Positions 5,432-39,940 of a stretch of 64,000 nucleotides of DNA are shown here, in pieces; the first letter of the stretch is position 1, and every line of letters begins with the position of its first letter. The notes below the pieces were generated by a model. The model saw only the letters and a program-made list of their open reading frames with translations, did no database searches and was not told where the DNA came from. The stretch is from sequence record LC592711.1. The stretch is one strand, 5' to 3'. A program made the position numbers and the translations under genes.

Positions 5432-5439
5432 TTTTAAAA
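5432..5439 (-). promoter_or_regulatory. TTTTAAAA box upstream of RBS (one of 12 copies, see findings)
   Basis: Same palindromic 8-mer lies within about 30 nt upstream of 12 minus-strand start codons. Confidence 0.55.
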
Positions 5440-5442
5440 AGA

Positions 5443-7293: not shown

Positions 7294-7342
7294 TTTAGCT
7301 CCTAATAAGGAATTGTAAAGTTTACAACAGGGATTCACGAGA

Positions 7343-7351
7343 GTTATATAT
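7343..7351 (-). promoter_or_regulatory. Putative phiKZ-type early promoter core (ATATATAAC)
   Basis: Matches ATATAT(T/A)AC seen at six intergenic sites with upstream TTT; resembles the TATTAC early element of phiKZ virion RNAP. Confidence 0.6.
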
Positions 7352-7372
7352 GTCTGAAATAAAGTGCATACT

Positions 7373-8198: not shown

Positions 8199-8285
8199 TT
8201 TCAAACCTCCTCAACGGAAAAAATGCGACCGAACCCCGAAGGATCCAGTCGCCCAACTTACCGGGCTGAGGCTCCCGGTAATCCT

Positions 8286-9875
8286 TTACTGCTGTTCGCC
8301 ATCCGGACCCGGATAGTCGATCGACGACTTCACCACCCAATCCGAAAGAGGCGGTTTACCTTCCAGGCTGCGAATGAAGTTCTTCACTCGTACTTCGAAC
8401 GGCATTACACGTCCGTCATACGTTTCGTACAGATGGTCGACCAATGCTGCGATGAACGCGTTCAGCTTCGTTTCACGATCCGGATCAATCGGATCGATCT
8501 TCAGCATGTTCGGGTTGATGTAGTGTTCAACTGCTGCACGAATGAAGTACTTCGGGTCTTCCGGGTTAGCGAAACGGCTGAACTTCTGATCCGTCTCTTC
8601 AAGCAAAGGACCAGGTTCGACGCCCGGGAAAGTTCCCCAGACGTGAGCAATCAACGTACGCTTGATCGTTTCGAATTGCGACATGCGTTCTTCTTCCGTA
8701 CCTTCCAGATAGAAGAGACTCGGCGACAGGTAGTTCTCGACGGCCTGACGGACCAGCAGGAGCTGCTTGTAGTCCGGATACTGCTGAAGCTTAACGCCTT
8801 CATGACCTGCCGTTTGACGCATTTCGCTCAACGCCAGCTTTTTGGCAGAAGAACGCGATGCGACCATCGTGTCGTAGACGGTTTTGAACTTCGTATCGTA
8901 AGCAACCATCTGGTCCTTGTAGACAACGTTCGGAACCAGATTCTTCTCGACGATACGAACAGTCGCACCGACACACTGTTGCTGGAACAAAGATTCCCAC
9001 GGTTCGGGCTTCACCGCCGTCTCGTATTGTTCATCGTTCCAGGTAACCGGGATACTCAGCACCCGAAGCTTATCGGCGATGATACCGCACAATGCCGACT
9101 TACCCACGCCGGTACGACCCATCACCACGACACGAATGTCCCCACCATTCAAGTAGTCGAGCGGAAGACCCTGACGACCCAGAACAGCCAATGTCCATGC
9201 CACGGCACCATCCCACATGACGCGAGCATTCTTCGTGTCATAATGACCGTACTGATTAGGATAGTGCGGATGGTCCGGATCGTAACGCTGGACATCCTTG
9301 ATGAAGTTCTGCTGACGTGCGAACGATTCGAACGCCTTGGTATCGTCGACGATGACGTCCGGCCGCTGTTCGATCAAACCGGTCTGCCAGCCATATGGCT
9401 CGATCTTGACTTCATGATAGCGGGCCAGTTGACGAACGTAAGCGACCGCATCGGACTCGTGCCAGAAATCGACGGAGTGTTTTACCATTCCGTTTTCGTA
9501 GCGCGAATAGACGCCGTAGCCTTTCGTTTCATCATTAGCGCCGTCCATCTGAATTTCGATGGAACCCTGCTCCAGTTCCTTAAACGGAGCAAGCTGAAGA
9601 CCGATGATCTTACCCGCCTTTTTATCGACGGTATGTTGGCCGATGTAGACAGGTATTTTGTATTCGTAGGCGAGGTTGGTCGCCGTTGCTGCAGCCTGAC
9701 CGATGTCGGTGAAGTAATTCGGATCGACTGGACTCAGGCTGCCGTCTTCGTGTTCCCAGAACAGAATCCAGCCAGCGAACCCGCGTTCGCCCTTCGCTTC
9801 AAATGCACCGACTACTTCACCATCGAGGTTTTTCACTGCGGGAATAACGCGAACCGACTTTGCTTTGTTCTGCAT
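8286..9875 (-). CDS. Mosaic hypothetical protein with duplicated N-terminal module and short P-loop
   Basis: VVVMGRTGVGKS Walker A-like motif; start moved to MQNKAK with AAGGTG RBS. Confidence 0.7.
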   Translation of the reverse strand: MQNKAKSVRVIPAVKNLDGEVVGAFEAKGERGFAGWILFWEHEDGSLSPVDPNYFTDIGQAAATATNLAYEYKIPVYIGQHTVDKKAGKIIGLQLAPFKELEQGSIEIQMDGANDETKGYGVYSRYENGMVKHSVDFWHESDAVAYVRQLARYHEVKIEPYGWQTGLIEQRPDVIVDDTKAFESFARQQNFIKDVQRYDPDHPHYPNQYGHYDTKNARVMWDGAVAWTLAVLGRQGLPLDYLNGGDIRVVVMGRTGVGKSALCGIIADKLRVLSIPVTWNDEQYETAVKPEPWESLFQQQCVGATVRIVEKNLVPNVVYKDQMVAYDTKFKTVYDTMVASRSSAKKLALSEMRQTAGHEGVKLQQYPDYKQLLLVRQAVENYLSPSLFYLEGTEEERMSQFETIKRTLIAHVWGTFPGVEPGPLLEETDQKFSRFANPEDPKYFIRAAVEHYINPNMLKIDPIDPDRETKLNAFIAALVDHLYETYDGRVMPFEVRVKNFIRSLEGKPPLSDWVVKSSIDYPGPDGEQQ

Positions 9876-9906
9876 GTTGTACACCTTTTAAAAAGAGACA
9901 TAGAGC

Positions 9907-9936
9907 ATAGACAGATGCCCGAAGGCATCTGTCTAT
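9907..9936 (-). terminator. 13-bp stem-loop with UUCG loop on the transcribed strand
   Basis: ATAGACAGATGCC-cgaa-GGCATCTGTCTAT; stem core shared with the 5443-5484 hairpin. Confidence 0.7.
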
Positions 9937-9949
9937 TCGCGCTTCGACG

Positions 9950-11164
9950 TTAGTCGTTGGTTTGCGGCTTGGCACGCTTTACTGCAGGCTTCTTGATCGG
10001 CGTTTTCTTCACCGGCACCGAAGCTTTCGACGGTTTCTTAGCCGCCGTGGTCGTAGCGGTTGCACCGCCTTCACCCAGGAGCGTTACCTTGAAGCCGAAC
10101 TTCTCGGCAAACGCCGCGGCTTGCTTCTGGGTAAGCTTCGACGTCATCGTCGGGTTCTTCAGACCGACCCCAGCAGCCATGCGGATCACCAGAGCGTGCT
10201 CGATGATGCCCATGCTGCGAACCAGCTGGTCGAGCTTGATGGTCTTCGGGATCTCGATGGTCGGCTGTTTACGACGAGCGCCTGCCAGACGATCGATTGC
10301 CTTCTGGAGCTCCGAGCCTTCCGGAAGCGGAGACTTTTTACCGAACATCATGCCTGACAGATCCAGCTTCGAGACCGGAGTCACACCTCCTGAGCTTGCT
10401 GCCGTAGATGCGACGGGTCCCGACATGATCGCCATACCGGCGCCAGAAGACGTCGAGAGATCCGTACCACCTTGGGTCTGTCCAACTTCTGCGAAGCCCG
10501 CCTGAGCCGTTTTAAGGCCCTCTGCGAACGTTCCTTGCTGGCCTTCTGTCAAGATCTTCGTATCCTTGAAGATCACGACGACGACATTGCCGATCGGACC
10601 GAGTTCCATGTACTGGATACGGTCGACCTGATCCGGATTTTCGTTGGCGGTGCCTTCGTAAACGCGGATGATTTCCTTTTGCTTCGTGTCGTAACCGACC
10701 CACACGGTGCTGCTGGAAACCTTGTGCAGGCCATCGGTCTGCGAAGCCTTCGGATCCGGATCGCGTTCGGTGACGTCATGCTCGACAACGAGACGACGCT
10801 TCCAGTACGAGATCGGTACTTCGACCGGCGTGTTGCTGCCGTCTTCCGGTTCTTGCTGAACCGAACGGATCGTCGGCGGGAAAGCTTCGTTGACCATCTT
10901 GCCATTGATGAGCTCGAACATCATGGCGTAATGTTGTTCCTGCGCCGAGCGAGCCTGACCGTGGAAGATCGGCGGTTCGTTCGTGTTGAAGCCGATGGTG
11001 TACTGCAGATACGGCAACGACTGGTGTTCGTCGTGGCCGACGGTCGTCGTGAGCTTCAGGTTCTGGCGAAGACACGCGAGCGACAGTTGCTGCTGCATCG
11101 ACAGGATGGTTGCGATACGCGCCGCGGCTTCCGGATTGGAAATGTTTTTGTTCAGGCTTTTCAA
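9950..11164 (-). CDS. Hypothetical protein with IF2_N-like domain and Lys/Pro/Ala-rich tail
   Basis: IPKTIKLDQLVRSMG...LVIRM...GL...TMTSKLTQKQAAAFAEKFGFKVTL resembles the IF2 N-terminal repeat; strong codon bias. Confidence 0.7.
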   Translation of the reverse strand: MKSLNKNISNPEAAARIATILSMQQQLSLACLRQNLKLTTTVGHDEHQSLPYLQYTIGFNTNEPPIFHGQARSAQEQHYAMMFELINGKMVNEAFPPTIRSVQQEPEDGSNTPVEVPISYWKRRLVVEHDVTERDPDPKASQTDGLHKVSSSTVWVGYDTKQKEIIRVYEGTANENPDQVDRIQYMELGPIGNVVVVIFKDTKILTEGQQGTFAEGLKTAQAGFAEVGQTQGGTDLSTSSGAGMAIMSGPVASTAASSGGVTPVSKLDLSGMMFGKKSPLPEGSELQKAIDRLAGARRKQPTIEIPKTIKLDQLVRSMGIIEHALVIRMAAGVGLKNPTMTSKLTQKQAAAFAEKFGFKVTLLGEGGATATTTAAKKPSKASVPVKKTPIKKPAVKRAKPQTND

Positions 11165-11174
11165 AGCGAGCTCC

Positions 11175-11510
11175 TCAGTTTTGATAGGACAGGTCCGTCA
11201 GGCGAACGTATTTTTCGATGAACTGTTCGTCGTTCAGGATCTGGGTGACATCATCGGAAACGACAATCCAATCGCCCTTCTTGCACAGGACGACTTGTTC
11301 GTCGATTTCGAATTCGAGTTCGTCGACCGGGCGTCCGATCAACGACGTGATTTTGCGGCGGGCGAGATGTTTGCAAAAGAGGAAGGGGATCTCATCCGCA
11401 TAGCCACGGTAACGGAAGGCGTAAACCTTCTGGACCGTTTTGGGGACGAAAGCATATTTCAGCATTTCGTCCTCTTCTTTCGTTGCCAAACGTCTTTCTT
11501 GAGACATCAT
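11175..11510 (-). CDS. Hypothetical protein
   Basis: 111-aa ORF in tightly packed operon; C-terminal GDWIV...FIEKY segment of a type common in small phage proteins. Confidence 0.65.
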   Translation of the reverse strand: MMSQERRLATKEEDEMLKYAFVPKTVQKVYAFRYRGYADEIPFLFCKHLARRKITSLIGRPVDELEFEIDEQVVLCKKGDWIVVSDDVTQILNDEQFIEKYVRLTDLSYQN

Positions 11511-11740: not shown

Positions 11741-11805
11741 CTTCCTTTCTATTAATCAACATATCAGGCCGTTCAATTGCTTTTTATTGCATTGGGTTCA
11801 CGTAG

Positions 11806-11814
11806 GTAATATAT
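11806..11814 (-). promoter_or_regulatory. Putative early promoter core ATATATTAC
   Basis: TTTATTTTGGAG-ATATATTAC-CT on the minus strand, intergenic. Confidence 0.68.
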
Positions 11815-11841
11815 CTCCAAAATAAACTACACATAAACACA

Positions 11842-11865: not shown

Positions 11866-12873
11866 TCAGAACAGATCTTCAGAGAACAACGGCGTGACGC
11901 TAATCAGGTAACCTCGCTCATCCATATCGCGCTCACGCCAGATGCCACCCATTTTGGGATCTTCCTGGTGAAAGAGTTTGGATGCGCAACGAGTCAGCGT
12001 CACGGACATCGTAGGCGTATCGACGATCATCTTGTTATCAACCGCCATGAGCATTGCCCGATACCGTGTAACGAAATTGCCGTGATTCGTAAGAAAACCC
12101 TGGACTTCGTTTCGCTGCTGCCCGGCGTATGCTTCCTGGTATTCCCGGGACTGCAGGATGTGGTGATGACGATGCGGACGATCGACGTACCACACCACAC
12201 CATCAGCCCAATTCGCAGCCGCTACCGGATACTCGTTCTCACGATCGATCGTGGCTTCCACGGCACGAAGGATCGGAGTACCAAAGTCTTTGAGTAGACG
12301 GAAGTTCGTCTGACTGAAGATTGCATTACGCAGCTTGTACAGCTGAGTAACATCTTCATCATTCTCGTCATAACGAATGATGGTCATCTGCATCGATGAC
12401 TCCACGATATGCGAACACATCGTGCCTTCAGTCTTCTGCCACTTGCGAGGACCAGTCAAGATCGCAATGATCGGTTGTTCGACTTTCCAGAACACGCAGA
12501 TGTACAGGATGTCGTATCCGAACAGTTCGCTGTTGACGATATCCGAATACGGAGTACCATCCATCAGCACGAAGTCACGACCCTTCTTCTCCGGGTTCTG
12601 TCGCATGAACTGCTCGGCGACCAAGATCGCTCGCATGCACAGCGATTCAGTTGTCTGAGGGTTCATGTCGTAAACCGGCTGAGTCAAACCACCCAGTCGG
12701 TAAACGTGCTTGCAGCCCTTCACGAAACGATAGAGCAGATCGTTGATTTTCGGACCCAGACCAATCGCACCGCTAGGGTTCGCACCCCAGTGACCGGAGA
12801 ACTGCGCCGGATAGCGGAAGTTAGTCTTCTTTACCAGCCCCGACAGGAGCTTTTCCGAGCTGTTTTGCGACAT
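11866..12873 (-). CDS. Hypothetical protein
   Basis: ORF with C-terminal RHHHIL...QGFLTNHGNFVTRYRA segment; start moved to MSQNS with AGGGAG RBS. Confidence 0.68.
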   Translation of the reverse strand: MSQNSSEKLLSGLVKKTNFRYPAQFSGHWGANPSGAIGLGPKINDLLYRFVKGCKHVYRLGGLTQPVYDMNPQTTESLCMRAILVAEQFMRQNPEKKGRDFVLMDGTPYSDIVNSELFGYDILYICVFWKVEQPIIAILTGPRKWQKTEGTMCSHIVESSMQMTIIRYDENDEDVTQLYKLRNAIFSQTNFRLLKDFGTPILRAVEATIDRENEYPVAAANWADGVVWYVDRPHRHHHILQSREYQEAYAGQQRNEVQGFLTNHGNFVTRYRAMLMAVDNKMIVDTPTMSVTLTRCASKLFHQEDPKMGGIWRERDMDERGYLISVTPLFSEDLF

Positions 12874-13309
12874 GAGGAGTATGCTCCCTGTTGAGTGCCT
12901 TGCACCACGCTGGGTAACCGGCAAGCGGAAAAGGCTCGATGTCTCTTCCGGGTTCATTTTCCATCGCCAGCAGAAACTCCTGGCGGTTCTTCTGTTCGTT
13001 CGGGTTGTACGGAATCAGACCCAGTCGAATCACCATGTCGTGAACGAAGTCCACGAATTCCGGTTCAGGCCAGCCCGTTTCACGAGCGACATCCATGATG
13101 AGATTCTGACGCCACTTCCAGCCCATGAGGTAGGCCATGGCGTAGAAGTTCTCGACCTGAGGTTGGTTATCGTCTTCTTCGACGACTGCTCCCCCATTGA
13201 AGCGAACCGCCGCACAACAGAGGTTCGCTAGCTCATGGATGAAGCGTTGTTTGACTTCTTCCGACAACGGCGGATTGAAGGTATTGACTTTGGCTTCTTT
13301 GTAGAACAC
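12821..13309 (-). CDS. Hypothetical protein
   Basis: 162-aa ORF with GAGG RBS; 3' end overlaps next gene. Confidence 0.6.
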   Translation of the reverse strand: MFYKEAKVNTFNPPLSEEVKQRFIHELANLCCAAVRFNGGAVVEEDDNQPQVENFYAMAYLMGWKWRQNLIMDVARETGWPEPEFVDFVHDMVIRLGLIPYNPNEQKNRQEFLLAMENEPGRDIEPFPLAGYPAWCKALNREHTPHVAKQLGKAPVGAGKED

Positions 13310-13379
13310 GGTTCGCCTCTCGAATGAAGCAAAAAAAATGGTGAGAGGATTTCCCTCTCACCACCAACGCGCTTCTCGC

Positions 13380-14822
13380 TTAAGCGCGGAGGAAAGCGTT
13401 CATCGCGTAGAACTTCAGCGACGGATCGAAGATCTGCGAGATCGTGCCGATCTTCCAGCGGTCTTCAGCCGGAATCTTGGCGATGAACTCGGGATCGCTC
13501 GGATGCGAGCCGCCATTGGACATGGAGTCCATGACGAAGCGACTGCTGATGGCCGGACGATGCGGATTGAGCGACAGCATTTCCAGCGTACCGATGAGCG
13601 AATCGATGACCGAACGCGACCAGCATTCCAGCGGAGTCGGCAGGAGCGAATCGTCTTGCAGGTCTTCGAGCCACTTGAAACCGACGTCGTTGAGTTCTTC
13701 TTCGTTCGTCGAGAGCTCGTAGTCTTCCGGCACCTGGATGGCGATCATCATTGCCAGGTGCTGCTTTTCGACATCGCCCGAAGCGTAGTCGAGGAAGAAT
13801 GTGGTGCGCTGATGCAGCCATTGTTCCGGCGAGCACATTGCATCCTGGGCGCCTTGAGCGATCAGGTCCATGATGTCCTTCGTCTCGTACGTCTCGACGA
13901 CTTGTGCATTTTGCACGCCACGGCCGTAGACACGCATTTCGATTTCTTCGCGCCCTTCGCGAATCACGTTGTTCATGATGCCGGTCCAGAAGCCTTCGCA
14001 CAGCAGACGACCCGAGAACGTATTGATGAGTTCGCTGCCGCCCGGGAAGGCATGCTTCACGAGCTTCGATTGCGTCGACAGGAAATCGTGCGGATTGATG
14101 TGGCCGCCCACGCCGACCGAACAGCCCAATGCCAGACGTTCTTCACCGACACCCTTGCCGCGCTGATACACGAAGATGCGATAGCGCTTGCCGATCTTCT
14201 TGTAGAACACGATGTACGGCAGCAGCTGGATGTAGCGGCTGTCGTTTTCGCACCAGCCGCGACGGATGAAGTTCAGAGCCCAGTAGACTGCTTCGTTCAG
14301 TTCGTTCGGACGCACTTCTTCTTGCGGGACCATCGTCATCATGTCGATGAAGTCACGGGCGGCGATTGCCAACACTTGTTCGACAGGCTTCTTCTGACCT
14401 TCGACCGAATCACACAGATCGGTGTAGGTCGGCAGACGACCGAAATCGTGTTCCTTCATCAGGTCGTGTTCGACCGGCGGCTTTTCGTCGACCATCAGCG
14501 GAATCTGGCCCGGATAGAGCAGCGTGCCGAAAAGCGGAACCGGCGCGATGTCGTCCATGATCTGTTCGCCGAACTGGTTCTTGAACCCGAGCGACACTTG
14601 TCCGCCGATCGGCGTGATGACTGCGTTCTCGTCGTCGCGCATCTTGGCTGCGCGTTTGATGATTTCGGTCTGCACCGGCAGCAACGGAACGTATGCACGC
14701 GCCGACAACGGGGGCATTTGCAGATCGTCGATTTCGTCTTGTTGGTTCGCTGCGGGCGTGATCAGAACGCGAGTAGCCTGGTCAGCTGCTTCGGCTTGGT
14801 CGAATTTTTCTTGCAGAGACAT
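13380..14822 (-). CDS. NUDIX-family phosphoesterase (COG4112-like) with N- and C-terminal extensions
   Basis: ENDSRYIQLLPY...VYQRG...EERL...SVGVGGHIN...REGREEI...HLAM pattern. Confidence 0.72.
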   Translation of the reverse strand: MSLQEKFDQAEAADQATRVLITPAANQQDEIDDLQMPPLSARAYVPLLPVQTEIIKRAAKMRDDENAVITPIGGQVSLGFKNQFGEQIMDDIAPVPLFGTLLYPGQIPLMVDEKPPVEHDLMKEHDFGRLPTYTDLCDSVEGQKKPVEQVLAIAARDFIDMMTMVPQEEVRPNELNEAVYWALNFIRRGWCENDSRYIQLLPYIVFYKKIGKRYRIFVYQRGKGVGEERLALGCSVGVGGHINPHDFLSTQSKLVKHAFPGGSELINTFSGRLLCEGFWTGIMNNVIREGREEIEMRVYGRGVQNAQVVETYETKDIMDLIAQGAQDAMCSPEQWLHQRTTFFLDYASGDVEKQHLAMMIAIQVPEDYELSTNEEELNDVGFKWLEDLQDDSLLPTPLECWSRSVIDSLIGTLEMLSLNPHRPAISSRFVMDSMSNGGSHPSDPEFIAKIPAEDRWKIGTISQIFDPSLKFYAMNAFLRA

Positions 14823-14934
14823 GGAAAATCCTTATCTAAAAAGTACTACCGGTTTAGGTCAAACCATCCGGTCTTGTAGTAAAAAATAAATTGAGCCGAG
14901 ATAGCCGAAGCTATCCCGATCTCATTTTCAAAGG

Positions 14935-16291: not shown

Positions 16292-16382
16292 TAGCCTCTC
16301 CTCATTTTAAAAAGTTGGTGTTTCGGTACAAAATAAAAAGCCCCGCTATGAAAAATAACGGGGCCTAACATCACCTCCCTAA

Positions 16383-22455: not shown

Positions 22456-22489
22456 TTTGTTACTCCTCAGTTTTAAAAAGACCTGGTAA

Positions 22490-23417: not shown

Positions 23418-23444
23418 TTTTCTTCCCCGTGTTTTAAAAAGGAA

Positions 23445-26068: not shown

Positions 26069-26953
26069 TTACTTCGTTTTAAAAAGGTTTACGACGTTTT
26101 GGGGTTTGGGACGAACCTTCAGATCCGGAATGCTGTCTTTCGTTTGCATCAGAACCTTGGTAGCCCAATGGAAAACTTTTGAGGGTTTGTCTTCCGTATA
26201 GCCGCGCGGAATCGAAACACCGGTTGCCATGCTAAATGCCATAGCGCATTGCCGGAAGAAAGTTTCGTCCAGCAAATGGTAAAACTTGACCAGATGGGCG
26301 GGATCCTGATACAGGCCGTGCAATTCTGCCTGATGGATGCTGCCAATGATGCGATCCAGTTCGATCGTGTTGAACATCTTGATCGGCCAGTCAGCGGGTG
26401 CTTCTTCGTCAGTATGGTAGACGATTCGGTCACGCTGCGTAATCACCATCGAGACGAGATAGTCCAGCACCTGCAGACCTTCGTAAGCCATGCGCTTCGG
26501 GATATGAGAACCCGTGAACATCGCGTTCGCATTGAAGTACGAGATCTGGCTAAGCTTCGCCATGATGTTAGCCGAAGTCTCCATCAATGCCGTGCCGAAT
26601 TCTTCGTCACCTGGGCGCATAGCACGAGCTTCGATTTCGTCGAGCAACAGCTTCGACATAGGCTCGCGTGCAAGAACCAGTTGTTCTACTTCCAGCAACC
26701 AGCCAGGTTGAACCTGCGTCGGATAAACTGCGACGCCTTTGAAGCCGAGCGTACGATGCTGGATCAGACCATCCTTACCCGGCTTTACCGCTTCGAGTAC
26801 AGGAGGTGTAATCTCACTACTTCCCATCCATTCATAAAGGCGAATGGAGTTAGATGACTGATGGAACTTGCCATCGAAGTCTTTAATGCATCCTTCAATG
26901 CTTGGTAGTACATATTCTTGTTGTCCGAGATTGATTGTCAAAGGTGTGTTCAT
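26069..26953 (-). CDS. Hypothetical protein
   Basis: 294-aa ORF abutting upstream stop. Confidence 0.68.
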   Translation of the reverse strand: MNTPLTINLGQQEYVLPSIEGCIKDFDGKFHQSSNSIRLYEWMGSSEITPPVLEAVKPGKDGLIQHRTLGFKGVAVYPTQVQPGWLLEVEQLVLAREPMSKLLLDEIEARAMRPGDEEFGTALMETSANIMAKLSQISYFNANAMFTGSHIPKRMAYEGLQVLDYLVSMVITQRDRIVYHTDEEAPADWPIKMFNTIELDRIIGSIHQAELHGLYQDPAHLVKFYHLLDETFFRQCAMAFSMATGVSIPRGYTEDKPSKVFHWATKVLMQTKDSIPDLKVRPKPQNVVNLFKTK

Positions 26954-27909: not shown

Positions 27910-28066
27910 GAAAAAGATCCCCGTCCAGACCCGAATGGGTCTGGATCGGGGCGACACTTATGACACGACAGGATCAACGGCTAAATCGGATCGCTCACCA
28001 TGCCATTAGTCCCGAGAGAATAGCACCCGAGTCGAGGAGAAGACTCTGGAGATGGGCAGCTATTCA
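27910..28066 (-). ncRNA. Candidate ~155-nt structured small RNA or attenuator leader
   Basis: Early promoter at 28072, 5' hairpin 28018-28065 with UUCUCCUC loop, terminator hairpin 27919-27951 plus T-tract; only 3- and 6-codon AUG-initiated ORFs inside. Confidence 0.45.
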
Positions 28067-28071
28067 ATTAG

Positions 28072-28080
28072 GTAATATAT
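28072..28080 (-). promoter_or_regulatory. Putative early promoter core ATATATTAC
   Basis: GATTTCACCG-ATATATTAC-CT immediately after the thyA stop. Confidence 0.68.
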
Positions 28081-28092
28081 CGGTGAAATCAG

Positions 28093-30140: not shown

Positions 30141-30149
30141 GTAATATAT
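30141..30149 (-). promoter_or_regulatory. Putative early promoter core ATATATTAC
   Basis: TTTGATCAGCC-ATATATTAC. Confidence 0.65.
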
Positions 30150-38902: not shown

Positions 38903-38961
38903 TTGGAATATCCTTTCAGTCATTTTAAAAAGTAGGGGACCGTAGTCCCCCGGTATACTAC

Positions 38962-39931: not shown

Positions 39932-39940
39932 GTTATATAT
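39932..39940 (-). promoter_or_regulatory. Putative early promoter core ATATATAAC
   Basis: TTTTTCAAAG-ATATATAAC. Confidence 0.6.

What the first reader, a model, noticed from the sequence alone, without database searches (positions are those of the whole stretch)
9950..11164. Phage protein with a translation initiation factor 2 N-terminal-like domain and histone-like basic tail
Seen at about 10074-10258: IPKTIKLDQLVRSMGIIEHALVIRMAAGVGLKNPTMTSKLTQKQAAAFAEKFGFKVTL. From memory this aligns with the bacterial IF2_N repeat pattern (ETITVxELAxKM...VIK...G...TINQxIDQETAxLVAEExGHKV). It is followed by an AKKP/KKTP-rich tail and preceded by a ~290-aa unknown region; no GTPase domain. Known: the IF2 N-terminal region contributes to ribosome binding. 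Inferred: a captured module that could tether a phage protein to ribosomes or compete with host IF2.
Basis: partly seen in the sequence, partly recalled or inferred. Interest (0 to 1): 0.75.

Follow-up and report, generated by a model that had tools for sequence, protein, structure and literature searches.

The report
Jumbo-phage protein with IF2-like domain
A gene of the jumbo phage FLC6 encodes a protein of unknown function whose last third is a real but very divergent copy of the small ribosome-anchoring 'N2' domain of bacterial initiation factor IF2, followed by a lysine-rich tail. Whether it touches ribosomes is untested.

Summary
The window is Burkholderia phage FLC6, a 227-kb Chiangmaivirus. 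The finding is gp139, annotated as hypothetical: 404 aa, coordinates 9950-11164, minus strand. The ORF, the quoted peptide (10079-10252) and the Lys/Pro-rich tail are all present.

FLC6 gp139 itself gives no Pfam hit. The IF2_N call still holds up:
- Three positional orthologues pass the Pfam IF2_N gathering score (81.6, 56.5 and 25.7 bits; cut-off 25.3).
- The FLC6-clade module aligns to their repeats (hhalign probability 96%).
- A profile of five cultured-phage modules has Pseudomonas IF2 residues 261-322 as its best PDB hit (E 0.006).

The module is N2-like, not N1-like. The ribosome reading remains inference:
- The IF2 residues that contact 16S helix h16 are not kept.
- Module charge differs between clades.
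- Orthologues swap the module for LysM or other segments.

The constant parts are a 230-aa N-terminal domain with no known relative and, often, the basic tail. A conserved phiKZ-early-type promoter motif precedes the gp141-gp140-gp139 unit.

Verdict: observation confirmed, interpretation partly supported, moderate interest.

The parts
11799..11822 (-). phiKZ-early-type promoter-like motif (TTT-N6-TATATTAC-N4-GTG) upstream of gp141, just after a small GC hairpin at 11859-11843
   Evidence: TATATWAC occurs 5 times in the window, all on the gene strand, against 0.65 expected. The extended motif occurs 3 times against 0.01 expected. An invariant ATATAT.A block follows a GC hairpin upstream of the orthologous unit in five phages (alignment A5). 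The same motif lies about 50 nt upstream of PHIKZ005, 006 and 011. Literature: PMC7058600 Table 2, PMC7598289.
11507..11740 (-). gp141, a small (75-77 aa) hydrophobic protein that is probably in the membrane; first gene of the unit
   Evidence: ORF, annotation. Only weak hits to membrane DUFs. A 75-aa gene sits at the same place in the orthologous loci.
11175..11510 (-). gp140, about 110 aa, unknown function (phrog_419); second gene of the unit. Its stop codon overlaps the Shine-Dalgarno sequence of gp139.
   Evidence: A 108-122 aa gene precedes every orthologue examined.
11171..11176 (-). Shine-Dalgarno sequence GAGGAG, 6 nt before the TTG start of gp139
   Evidence: Read directly from the sequence.
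9950..11164 (-). gp139 coding sequence (404 aa plus stop), member of PHROG 36087
   Evidence: (E 1.5e-205).
10475..11164 (-). N-terminal conserved alpha/beta domain, aa 1-230. It is the constant core of the family and has no detectable relative of known structure or function.
   Evidence: pLDDT above 90 in model m22003a00985f. It is N-terminal in all 41 family members. G88, P96, P97, W121, W155, G157 and N174 are invariant in 38 sequences. No PDB or BFVD relative apart from orthologues.
10313..10474 (-). Disordered Ser/Ala/Gly/Thr-rich linker, aa 231-284
   Evidence: pLDDT 28-50. S+T+A+G+P fraction 0.63. Poorly conserved and indel-rich.
10067..10312 (-). Conserved helix (aa 285-296) plus the IF2_N-type, IF2-N2-like module (aa about 297-366; beta-alpha-alpha-beta-alpha-beta; net charge +7)
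   Evidence: pLDDT 79-97. Foldseek top hit 7UIU, the IF2 N2 sub-domain: probability 1.00, TM (target) 0.65, rmsd 2.0 A, 66 columns, 27% identity. Profile hits to IF2. hhalign to orthologue IF2_N repeats. Charge.
9953..10066 (-). Gly/Ala/Thr spacer and Lys/Pro-rich basic tail, aa 367-404, net +9. It ends in a clade-conserved Q-[ST]-N-D.
   Evidence: pLDDT below 50. A basic tail (at least 9 K/R in the last 40 residues) is found in 24 of 42 retrieved sequences, including several without the IF2-like module.
9907..9936 (-). Perfect 13-bp hairpin with a TTCG loop, 14 nt after the gp139 stop. It is the likely end of the unit; the T-run is not adjacent to the stem.
   Evidence: Read from the sequence. 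The scan lists only a weaker overlapping hairpin at 9920-9903. A CTTTTTAAAA motif for gp138 follows at 9886-9895.

Best explanation
Shown. gp139 is the FLC6 member of a protein family confined to Chiangmaivirus-like jumbo phages (PHROG 36087). It has four parts: a conserved 230-aa N-terminal alpha/beta domain with no known relative, a disordered linker, a 70-aa C-terminal module, and a Lys/Pro-rich tail. The module is a divergent homologue of the IF2_N domain and is closest to the N2 sub-domain, which anchors IF2 on helix h16 of the 30S shoulder. The gene is last in a conserved three-gene unit (gp141, gp140, gp139) that is preceded by a conserved phiKZ-early-type promoter motif.

Inferred. The protein is made early and acts inside the cell as a tethering protein. 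The basic C-terminal third (module +7, tail +9) binds a structured nucleic acid, and the small ribosomal subunit or its rRNA is the leading candidate because that is what the closest structural relative binds. This would place the acidic, conserved N-terminal domain, which carries the family's real and still unknown activity, on that target. The binding mode is probably not a copy of IF2's, because the contact residues are not kept.
For: Homology of the module:
- Pfam IF2_N scores 81.6, 56.5 and 25.7 bits (cut-off 25.3) in P0020, P0019 and P0021, and a sub-threshold 15.2 bits in the 64%-identical P0004.
- These proteins are positional orthologues with the same upstream gene block.
- hhalign of the FLC6-clade module against their repeats gives probability 96.3%, E 1.6e-9.
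- A profile of five cultured-phage modules has P. aeruginosa IF2 261-322 as its top PDB hit, E 0.0063. With two P0020 repeats added, E is 2.5e-8, and E. coli IF2 310-367 scores 9e-8.
- TIGR00487 positions 2-58/66 match P0020 and P0019.
- The top Foldseek hit is 7UIU in two independent models.

N2 function: it binds h16 of 16S rRNA on the 30S shoulder (PMC9192638).

Charge: module +7, tail +9, N-domain -7.

Early-type promoter: with PMC7058600 and PMC7598289.

Precedent: early jumbo-phage proteins bind ribosomes, as PhiKZ014 does (PMC10914614). Homologues of PhiKZ014 are found only in Pseudomonas phages.
Against: - There is no experimental datum on this family.
- FLC6 gp139 alone has no Pfam, NCBIfam or PDB sequence hit.
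- The h16-contact residues of IF2 N2 are not conserved. They map to G319 to E322 in FLC6 and to E-V-E in P0020 repeat 2. The loop is indel-prone.
- The bona fide IF2_N repeats of the distant orthologues are acidic, -4 to -7, which does not suit an RNA-binding surface.
- The module is dispensable across the family. It is replaced by an unrelated roughly 110-aa segment in P0010 and P0011, by LysM in P0024, or is absent.
- IF2_N also occurs in non-translation proteins, for example a DGR target with an FGE-sulfatase domain (PMC5758913).
- The early timing is inferred from a motif, not measured.
Confidence: 0.38

Rival explanations
1. General DNA-binding protein. The HTH-like module plus the lysine-rich tail bind double-stranded DNA without sequence specificity. 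The protein would then be a phage-genome or nucleoid-associated factor, for example in the phage nucleus or in host-nucleoid remodelling, and not a ribosome ligand.
For: The last 108 residues carry net +16. The tail is the more widely kept C-terminal feature, present in 24 of 42 sequences including proteins without the module. The IF2_N-type repeats give weak HTH-family cross-hits: HTH_Crp_2 at E 0.001, and Rv2175c wHTH and NirDL HTH at E 0.08-0.02. PDB hits to the tail are basic low-complexity extensions of SigA and ribosomal proteins.
Against: No DNA-binding family passes its threshold. The best structural and profile relative is an rRNA-binding sub-domain. The repeats in distant orthologues are acidic.
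Confidence: 0.2
2. Virion-associated or cell-envelope-directed protein. The conserved N-domain would be a structural anchor, and the variable C-terminal region a swappable binding module, as in decoration or receptor-binding proteins.
For: The C-terminal region is highly variable, 0-532 aa with at least 12 unrelated types. One orthologue carries LysM, a peptidoglycan-binding module (NCBIfam E 4.7e-11; Pfam 20.7 against 20.9 bits). Two carry ALTTAQ repeats. A small membrane protein (gp141) is co-transcribed.
Against: There is no signal peptide or transmembrane segment in gp139. It is not among the 16 proteins that the FLC6 authors list as structural (PMC8066314). The unit has an early-type rather than a late-type promoter motif. 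There is no structural similarity to any virion protein in PDB or BFVD.
Confidence: 0.12
3. Protein-protein adaptor to the host transcription machinery. Like the N1 copy of IF2_N in E. coli IF2, which binds the KH2/AR1 region of NusA, the module would dock on NusA/RNAP. This is relevant because RSL2 and RSF1 need host RNA polymerase.
For: E. coli IF2 Domain I (N1 plus residues 57-90) binds NusA directly (PMC12297416). A basic module would suit the acidic repeats of NusA. RSL2 and RSF1 are rifampicin-sensitive, while RP12 and RP31 are not (PMC5468394). RP12 has no tblastn match to gp139 although it is in the collection.
Against: The module matches the N2 copy, not N1. For P. aeruginosa IF2 the scores are N1 -2.5 bits and N2 37.4 bits; for E. 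coli IF2 they are -3.7 and 35.6 bits. The beta-strand extension (57-90) that takes part in NusA binding has no counterpart here. The presence/absence correlation rests on two genera.
Confidence: 0.1
4. Chance resemblance. The C-terminal segment is a generic small helical module unrelated to IF2_N.
For: FLC6 gp139 alone gives no Pfam hit at E up to 10 and no IF2 hit by phmmer. The clade-only profile hit is marginal on its own: E 0.0063, domain E 0.022. Foldseek E-values are only 0.008-0.02.
Against: Four independent lines converge on the same 60 residues of IF2: orthologues above the Pfam cut-off, hhalign at 96%, IF2 ranked first of 177,635 PDB sequences, and the IF2 N2 sub-domain ranked first or second among 350,542 PDB chains at 2.0 A rmsd and 27% identity.
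Confidence: 0.05

Closest known systems
N2 sub-domain of bacterial IF2 (P. aeruginosa IF2 residues about 248-332, PDB 7UIU/7UNV; E. coli IF2 about 304-367)
   Same: Same small fold. It is the best structural match (rmsd 2.0 A over 66 columns, 27% identity) and the best PDB profile match. A basic segment lies immediately before the module in both.
   Different: The phage module sits at the C-terminal end of a protein with no G domain. It follows an unrelated 230-aa domain and precedes a Lys-rich tail. The residues that contact h16 in IF2 are not conserved (PMC9192638).
Pfam IF2_N (PF04760) as a mobile domain
   Same: Orthologues P0020, P0019 and P0021 pass the gathering score with 1-3 tandem copies. 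The domain is already known outside IF2, for example in a DGR target protein (PMC5758913).
   Different: FLC6 gp139 and its close relatives fall below the model's detection limit. The best of them, P0004, scores 15.2 bits.
PhiKZ014 (and Churi gp335), early ribosome-binding proteins of Pseudomonas jumbo phages
   Same: Jumbo-phage origin and early-type expression signal. Comparable layout: N-terminal helix, beta domain, disordered region, small C-terminal helical domain (PMC10914614; model).
   Different: No homology: hhalign probability 0.3% and BLASTP E above 2. PhiKZ014 was not among the top 50 fold hits. It clamps 5S rRNA on the 50S subunit, and its homologues occur only in Pseudomonas phages.
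N1 sub-domain (IF2N) of E. coli IF2, a NusA-binding module
   Same: Same Pfam family and same fold class.
   Different: Profile scores to N1 are negative. NusA binding also needs residues 57-90 of IF2 (PMC12297416), which have no counterpart here.
Lys/Ala/Pro-rich tails of linker histones and bacterial nucleoid proteins
   Same: Composition: K, P and A repeats with net charge +9.
   Different: The likeness is compositional only. No family model matches, and the PDB hits are assorted basic extensions.

Membership tests
Pfam IF2_N (PF04760) | Score at or above the curated gathering cut-off (25.3 bits) | tested here: not met
   FLC6 gp139 has no hit at E up to 10. The close homologue P0004 scores 15.2 bits. 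The feature is met only by the positional orthologues P0020 (81.6), P0019 (56.5) and P0021 (25.7).
Pfam IF2_N (PF04760) | Profile-level homology to sequences that are members | tested here: met
   hhalign of the FLC6-clade module against orthologue IF2_N repeats gives probability 96.3%, E 1.6e-9, 58 columns. The clade-only profile A4 has IF2 as its top PDB hit at E 0.0063. Profile A3 gives E 2.5e-8.
Pfam IF2_N (PF04760) | The fold of the IF2 N1/N2 sub-domains (small helical bundle with short strands) | tested here: met
   The model has pLDDT 79-97 over aa 300-366. Top Foldseek hit 7UIU: TM (target) 0.65, rmsd 2.0 A, 27% identity. This is a predicted structure, not a solved one.
Functional IF2 N2 sub-domain (30S shoulder anchor) | Conservation of the h16-contacting residues (S277, V278, K279, R259 of P. 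aeruginosa IF2) | tested here: not met
   Transitive mapping through real sequences gives S277 to G319, V278 to I321, K279 to E322 and R259 to P301 in FLC6, and E, V, E and K in P0020 repeat 2. The mapping depends on the alignment, and the loop has indels.
Functional IF2 N2 sub-domain (30S shoulder anchor) | Binding to the 30S subunit | not testable with these tools
   No experimental data exist for this family.
Translation initiation factor IF2 (TIGR00487) | GTPase domain, domain II and C1/C2 domains; score at or above 424 bits | tested here: not met
   FLC6 gp139 has no hit. P0020 and P0019 score 36 and 48 bits over model positions 2-58/66 only. There is no GTP_EFTU or other Pfam hit.
PhiKZ014-type ribosome-binding protein | Sequence or profile homology to PHIKZ014 | tested here: not met
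   hhalign probability 0.3%. BLASTP E is 2.8 or higher.
PASTA domain (penicillin-binding protein / PknB type) | Reproducible sequence or fold match | tested here: not met
   There is a single weak phmmer hit to S. aureus PBP1 at E 0.014. It is not reproduced with the module alone or with profiles. It is absent from the Foldseek top 50, and the predicted topology differs.
PHROG 36087 (unknown function) | Full-length profile match | tested here: met
   E 1.5e-205 over aa 23-404 against the whole 387-position profile. 36 of 38 relatives match.

The most novel reading that the evidence does not exclude
gp139 is a phage-made mimic of the IF2 N2 anchor. It is expressed from an early promoter in phages that lack any PhiKZ014 homologue. 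It docks on the 30S shoulder (h16) through its IF2-like module and basic tail and brings a new 230-aa effector domain to the initiating ribosome. There it either displaces the N-terminal anchor of host IF2 or marks ribosomes for phage messages. That would make it a second, independent solution to early ribosome capture by nucleus-forming jumbo phages.
Probability: 0.12. Interest if true: 0.85.

Novelty: new variant of a known kind. Interest (0 to 1): 0.5.

Why it matters
[quoted passage not shown] A phage protein carrying a homologue of the IF2 sub-domain that anchors the factor on the 30S shoulder would give a concrete, testable candidate for a second such mechanism. It comes from a different phage genus that infects plant-associated Burkholderia and Ralstonia. 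The protein also pairs that module with a well-predicted 230-aa domain that has no known relative. If the ribosome link fails, the result is still useful. It shows that IF2_N is a mobile, exchangeable module in a jumbo-phage protein family. It also assigns a domain architecture and a probable early expression class to a gene annotated only as hypothetical.

Tried and rejected
1. Direct Pfam, NCBIfam and PDB sequence searches with FLC6 gp139 or its module alone found no IF2 hit. The signal appears only with orthologues, profiles and structure.
2. PASTA domain: one weak hit at E 0.014. It was not reproducible and is rejected.
3. Homology to PhiKZ014. I fetched it via NC_004629, which PMC10914614 cites. 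It is rejected.
4. Search for a recent donor of the module: a word-based search with the two best repeats of P0020 returned only P0020 itself.
5. N-terminal domain: profiles A1 and A2 against PDB hit only low-complexity matches to the tail. Foldseek against PDB and BFVD gave no convincing match beyond the RSF1 orthologue.
6. Virion proteomics of RSL2/RSF1 (Bhunchoth et al. 2016) is not held in the library. The FLC6, SURPRISE13 and RP12/RP31 papers give no data on this gene.
7. The sigma-70 promoter scan was at chance level.
8. A second copy of the module elsewhere in the window: none found.

At one point I also read residue correspondences off a consensus line printed by HMMER. I then redid that mapping from real sequences only, and I report only the redone version.
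Full report
IDENTITY AND OBSERVATION

The window is 100% identical to Burkholderia phage FLC6 (LC592711.1), a 227-kb Chiangmaivirus related to phiKZ. Record coordinate equals window coordinate plus 124000. The finding is FLC6_gp139 (BCM95175.1, hypothetical protein), the ORF at 9950..11164 on the minus strand, 404 aa. The quoted peptide translates exactly from 10079-10252 and covers aa 305-362.

The TTG start is credible for two reasons. A GAGGAG Shine-Dalgarno sequence lies 6 nt upstream. The first 22 residues and a non-ATG Leu-codon (TTG or CTG) start are also conserved in RSL2, RsoM3USA, RSF1 and SURPRISE13. No GTPase or other curated family is present.

ARCHITECTURE

An AlphaFold model built on 14 close homologues was poor outside the C-terminal module: mean pLDDT 53, with the module at 79-87. 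A model built on 38 sequences that included distant relatives was good, with mean pLDDT 81.6. It shows four parts:
- aa 1-230: a confident alpha/beta domain. It has a long helix (11-33), an alpha-beta-beta-beta-alpha unit, a beta-rich part, and a helix at 213-228.
- aa 231-284: a disordered Ser/Ala/Gly-rich linker.
- aa 285-366: a helix followed by a compact beta-alpha-alpha-beta-alpha-beta module.
- aa 367-404: a disordered tail.

The net charges are -7 for the N-domain, +7 for the module and +9 for the tail.

IS THE MODULE AN IF2_N DOMAIN?

By single-sequence methods it is not. There is no Pfam hit at E up to 10, no NCBIfam hit, and no IF2 hit by phmmer against PDB. Four independent lines nevertheless agree.

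1. Orthologues pass the Pfam threshold. An exhaustive profile search found 33 representatives that share the N-domain. Three of them pass the Pfam IF2_N gathering score of 25.3 bits: P0020 at 81.6 bits with three copies, P0019 at 56.5 bits with two copies, and P0021 at 25.7 bits. The 64%-identical P0004 reaches 15.2 bits over the same residues. These proteins are positional orthologues. The upstream block of roughly 480, 150, 330, 75 and 110 aa genes is the same as FLC6 gp144 to gp140.

2. The modules align to each other. hhalign of the FLC6-clade module (11 sequences) against six of those repeats gives probability 96.3%, E 1.6e-9, over 58 columns.

3. Profiles find IF2 in the PDB. A profile of the module from the five cultured phages alone ranks P. 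aeruginosa IF2 residues 261-322 first among 177,635 PDB sequences, at E 0.0063. Adding two P0020 repeats gives E 2.5e-8, and 9e-8 for E. coli IF2 310-367. That second result is partly driven by the added repeats, which hit IF2 on their own.

4. The fold matches. [quoted passage not shown]

The match is to the N2 copy next to the G domain, not to the extreme N-terminal N1 copy. N1 scores are negative, and TIGR00487 matches at its positions 2-58/66. I therefore accept the module as a divergent IF2_N-type domain while noting that it fails the Pfam threshold itself.

WHAT THAT DOES AND DOES NOT IMPLY

In the P. aeruginosa 70S initiation complex, the N2 sub-domain binds helix h16 of 16S rRNA on the 30S shoulder. 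The contacts are S277, V278, K279 and R259, and an extension lies in the minor groove (PMC9192638).

I mapped those residues through real sequences: P0020 against IF2 and FLC6 against P0020. The contact loop becomes G319 to E322 in FLC6 and E-V-E in P0020 repeat 2, so it holds no basic residue. R259 maps to P301 in FLC6, although R297, R298 and K299 lie just upstream.

Three further points weaken the idea of a shared RNA-binding surface:
- The loop is the most indel-prone part of the module in close homologues.
- The module is basic in the FLC6 clade (+2 to +8) but acidic (-4 to -7) in the distant orthologues whose repeats are the best IF2_N matches.
- The module is not a constant of the family. 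P0010 and P0011 replace it with an unrelated segment of about 110 aa while keeping the basic tail and the terminal Q-S-N-D. P0024 carries LysM instead. P0026 and P0028 carry ALTTAQ repeats. Several members are little more than the N-domain.

The basic tail is more widespread than the module. It occurs in 24 of 42 sequences, including proteins without the module.

The picture is a conserved N-terminal domain carrying the core activity, joined by a flexible linker to exchangeable binding modules and a basic tail. IF2_N is known outside IF2 in at least one other setting (PMC5758913). The N1 copy in E. coli binds NusA (PMC12297416), so the fold can serve protein contacts as well as RNA contacts.

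EXPRESSION CONTEXT

On the gene strand, 60-70 nt upstream of gp141, sits TTT-N6-TATATTAC-N4-GTG (11799-11822).
- TATATWAC occurs five times in the window, always on the gene strand, against 0.65 expected. Four of the five sites are intergenic.
- The extended motif occurs three times against 0.01 expected.
- TATATTAC is the predicted phiKZ promoter, and the longer form resembles the 201phi2-1 consensus (PMC7058600).
- In phiKZ itself the motif lies about 50 nt upstream of PHIKZ005, 006 and 011.
- Aligning the region upstream of the gp141 orthologue in FLC6, RSL2 and three metagenomic phages shows a GC hairpin followed by an invariant ATATAT.A block in otherwise diverged sequence.

The unit gp141 (small hydrophobic protein), gp140 and gp139 ends at a perfect 13-bp hairpin (9936-9907). 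A different over-represented motif, CTTTTTAAAA, then precedes gp138. I infer that gp139 is an early gene. This is inference by analogy, not measurement.

RELATION TO KNOWN PHAGE RIBOSOME BINDERS

PhiKZ014 has a similar layout and is an early protein that binds the 50S subunit (PMC10914614). It is not homologous to gp139: hhalign probability 0.3% and BLASTP E of 2.8 or more. Its detectable homologues are confined to Pseudomonas phages. Conversely, gp139 relatives among cultured phages occur only in the eleven Ralstonia/Burkholderia Chiangmaivirus-type records. They are not found in RP12.

MECHANISM AND WEIGHTING

- Best-supported reading (0.38): an early intracellular tethering protein. Its basic IF2-N2-like module and tail bind a structured nucleic acid, with the 30S subunit as the leading candidate, and so position the conserved N-domain.
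- Rival, general DNA binding: 0.20.
- Rival, virion or envelope-directed protein with swappable binding modules: 0.12.
- Rival, NusA/RNAP adaptor: 0.10.
- Rival, chance resemblance: 0.05.

The homology and the architecture are shown. The target, the timing and the activity of the N-domain are inferred.

NOVELTY AND SCORE

The domain family is known and is known to be mobile. Three things are new: its presence as a C-terminal, exchangeable module in a jumbo-phage protein family, its pairing with an uncharacterised and well-folded 230-aa domain, and its probable early expression. I rate this a new variant of a known kind, with interest 0.5. Its functional claim is a reasonable hypothesis that the conservation pattern weakens but does not exclude.

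Noticed in passing
window, minus strand: 5432-5441, 9886-9895, 16305-16314, 22471-22480, 23432-23441, 26077-26086, 38923-38932 and near-matches: The motif CTTTTTAAAA is strongly over-represented: 27 matches with up to 1 mismatch against 2.5 expected, partly because of palindromic overlap. It lies about 10-25 nt upstream of many gene starts (gp129, gp138, gp147, gp149 and others), often right after a terminator hairpin. It looks like a second class of promoter-like element, distinct from the TATATWAC motif.
   Followed up: partly
window 7336-7359, 28065-28088, 30141-30148, 39932-39939 (minus strand): Further copies of the phiKZ-early-type TATATWAC motif lie upstream of gp134, gp167 and gp180. 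One lies inside the annotated 5' end of gp170, which may mean that start is mis-annotated.
   Followed up: partly
window 8286-9884 (minus strand), gp138: This 529-532 aa protein of unknown function (phrog_31825) has a Walker-A-like GRTGVGKS and a weak ABC_tran hit at E 0.0057, so it is probably a P-loop NTPase. The GenBank note reads 'FLC6_xxxxx' instead of a gp number.
   Followed up: no
P0010, P0011 (metagenomic orthologues); P0024 (L007:649-1530): P0010 and P0011 replace the IF2-like module with an unrelated insert of about 110 aa yet keep the basic tail and the terminal Q-S-N-D. P0024 has the N-domain followed by a LysM domain.
   Followed up: partly
window 10900-11134 (aa 11-88 of gp139): The first sub-domain has alpha-beta-beta-beta-alpha topology. 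Low-probability Foldseek hits to dsRBD proteins (Staufen, MLE, DHX9, DRB7.2, mitoribosomal proteins) and to T7 gp1.2 recur in three searches. The tool gives no alignment ranges, so this dsRBD-like lead could not be confirmed.
   Followed up: no
L003:6001-7230 (RSL2 ORF129) versus P0002: The two RSL2 records disagree on the start of the orthologue. AP014693 annotates 409 aa from the non-ATG Leu-codon (TTG or CTG) start. The 387-aa form (P0002, PHROG profile) starts at the internal Met equivalent to M23. Conservation of the first 22 residues favours the long form.
   Followed up: yes
window 11866-12957 / 12821-13309 (gp142, gp143) and orthologous loci L002, L009, L010: The 326-336 aa gene upstream of the unit gives weak or faint hits to Pfam T4_Y16D in three orthologous loci. 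The whole block gp144 to gp139 is syntenic across distant jumbo-phage contigs and ends near a divergent DnaB helicase gene.
   Followed up: no
window 8223-9953 (+), 13338-14879 (+), 10472-11221 (+): Long mechanical ORFs (576, 513 and 249 aa) lie antisense to gp138, gp144 and gp139. They have no homologues and implausible composition, and they are most likely by-products of codon bias on the coding strand.
   Followed up: no
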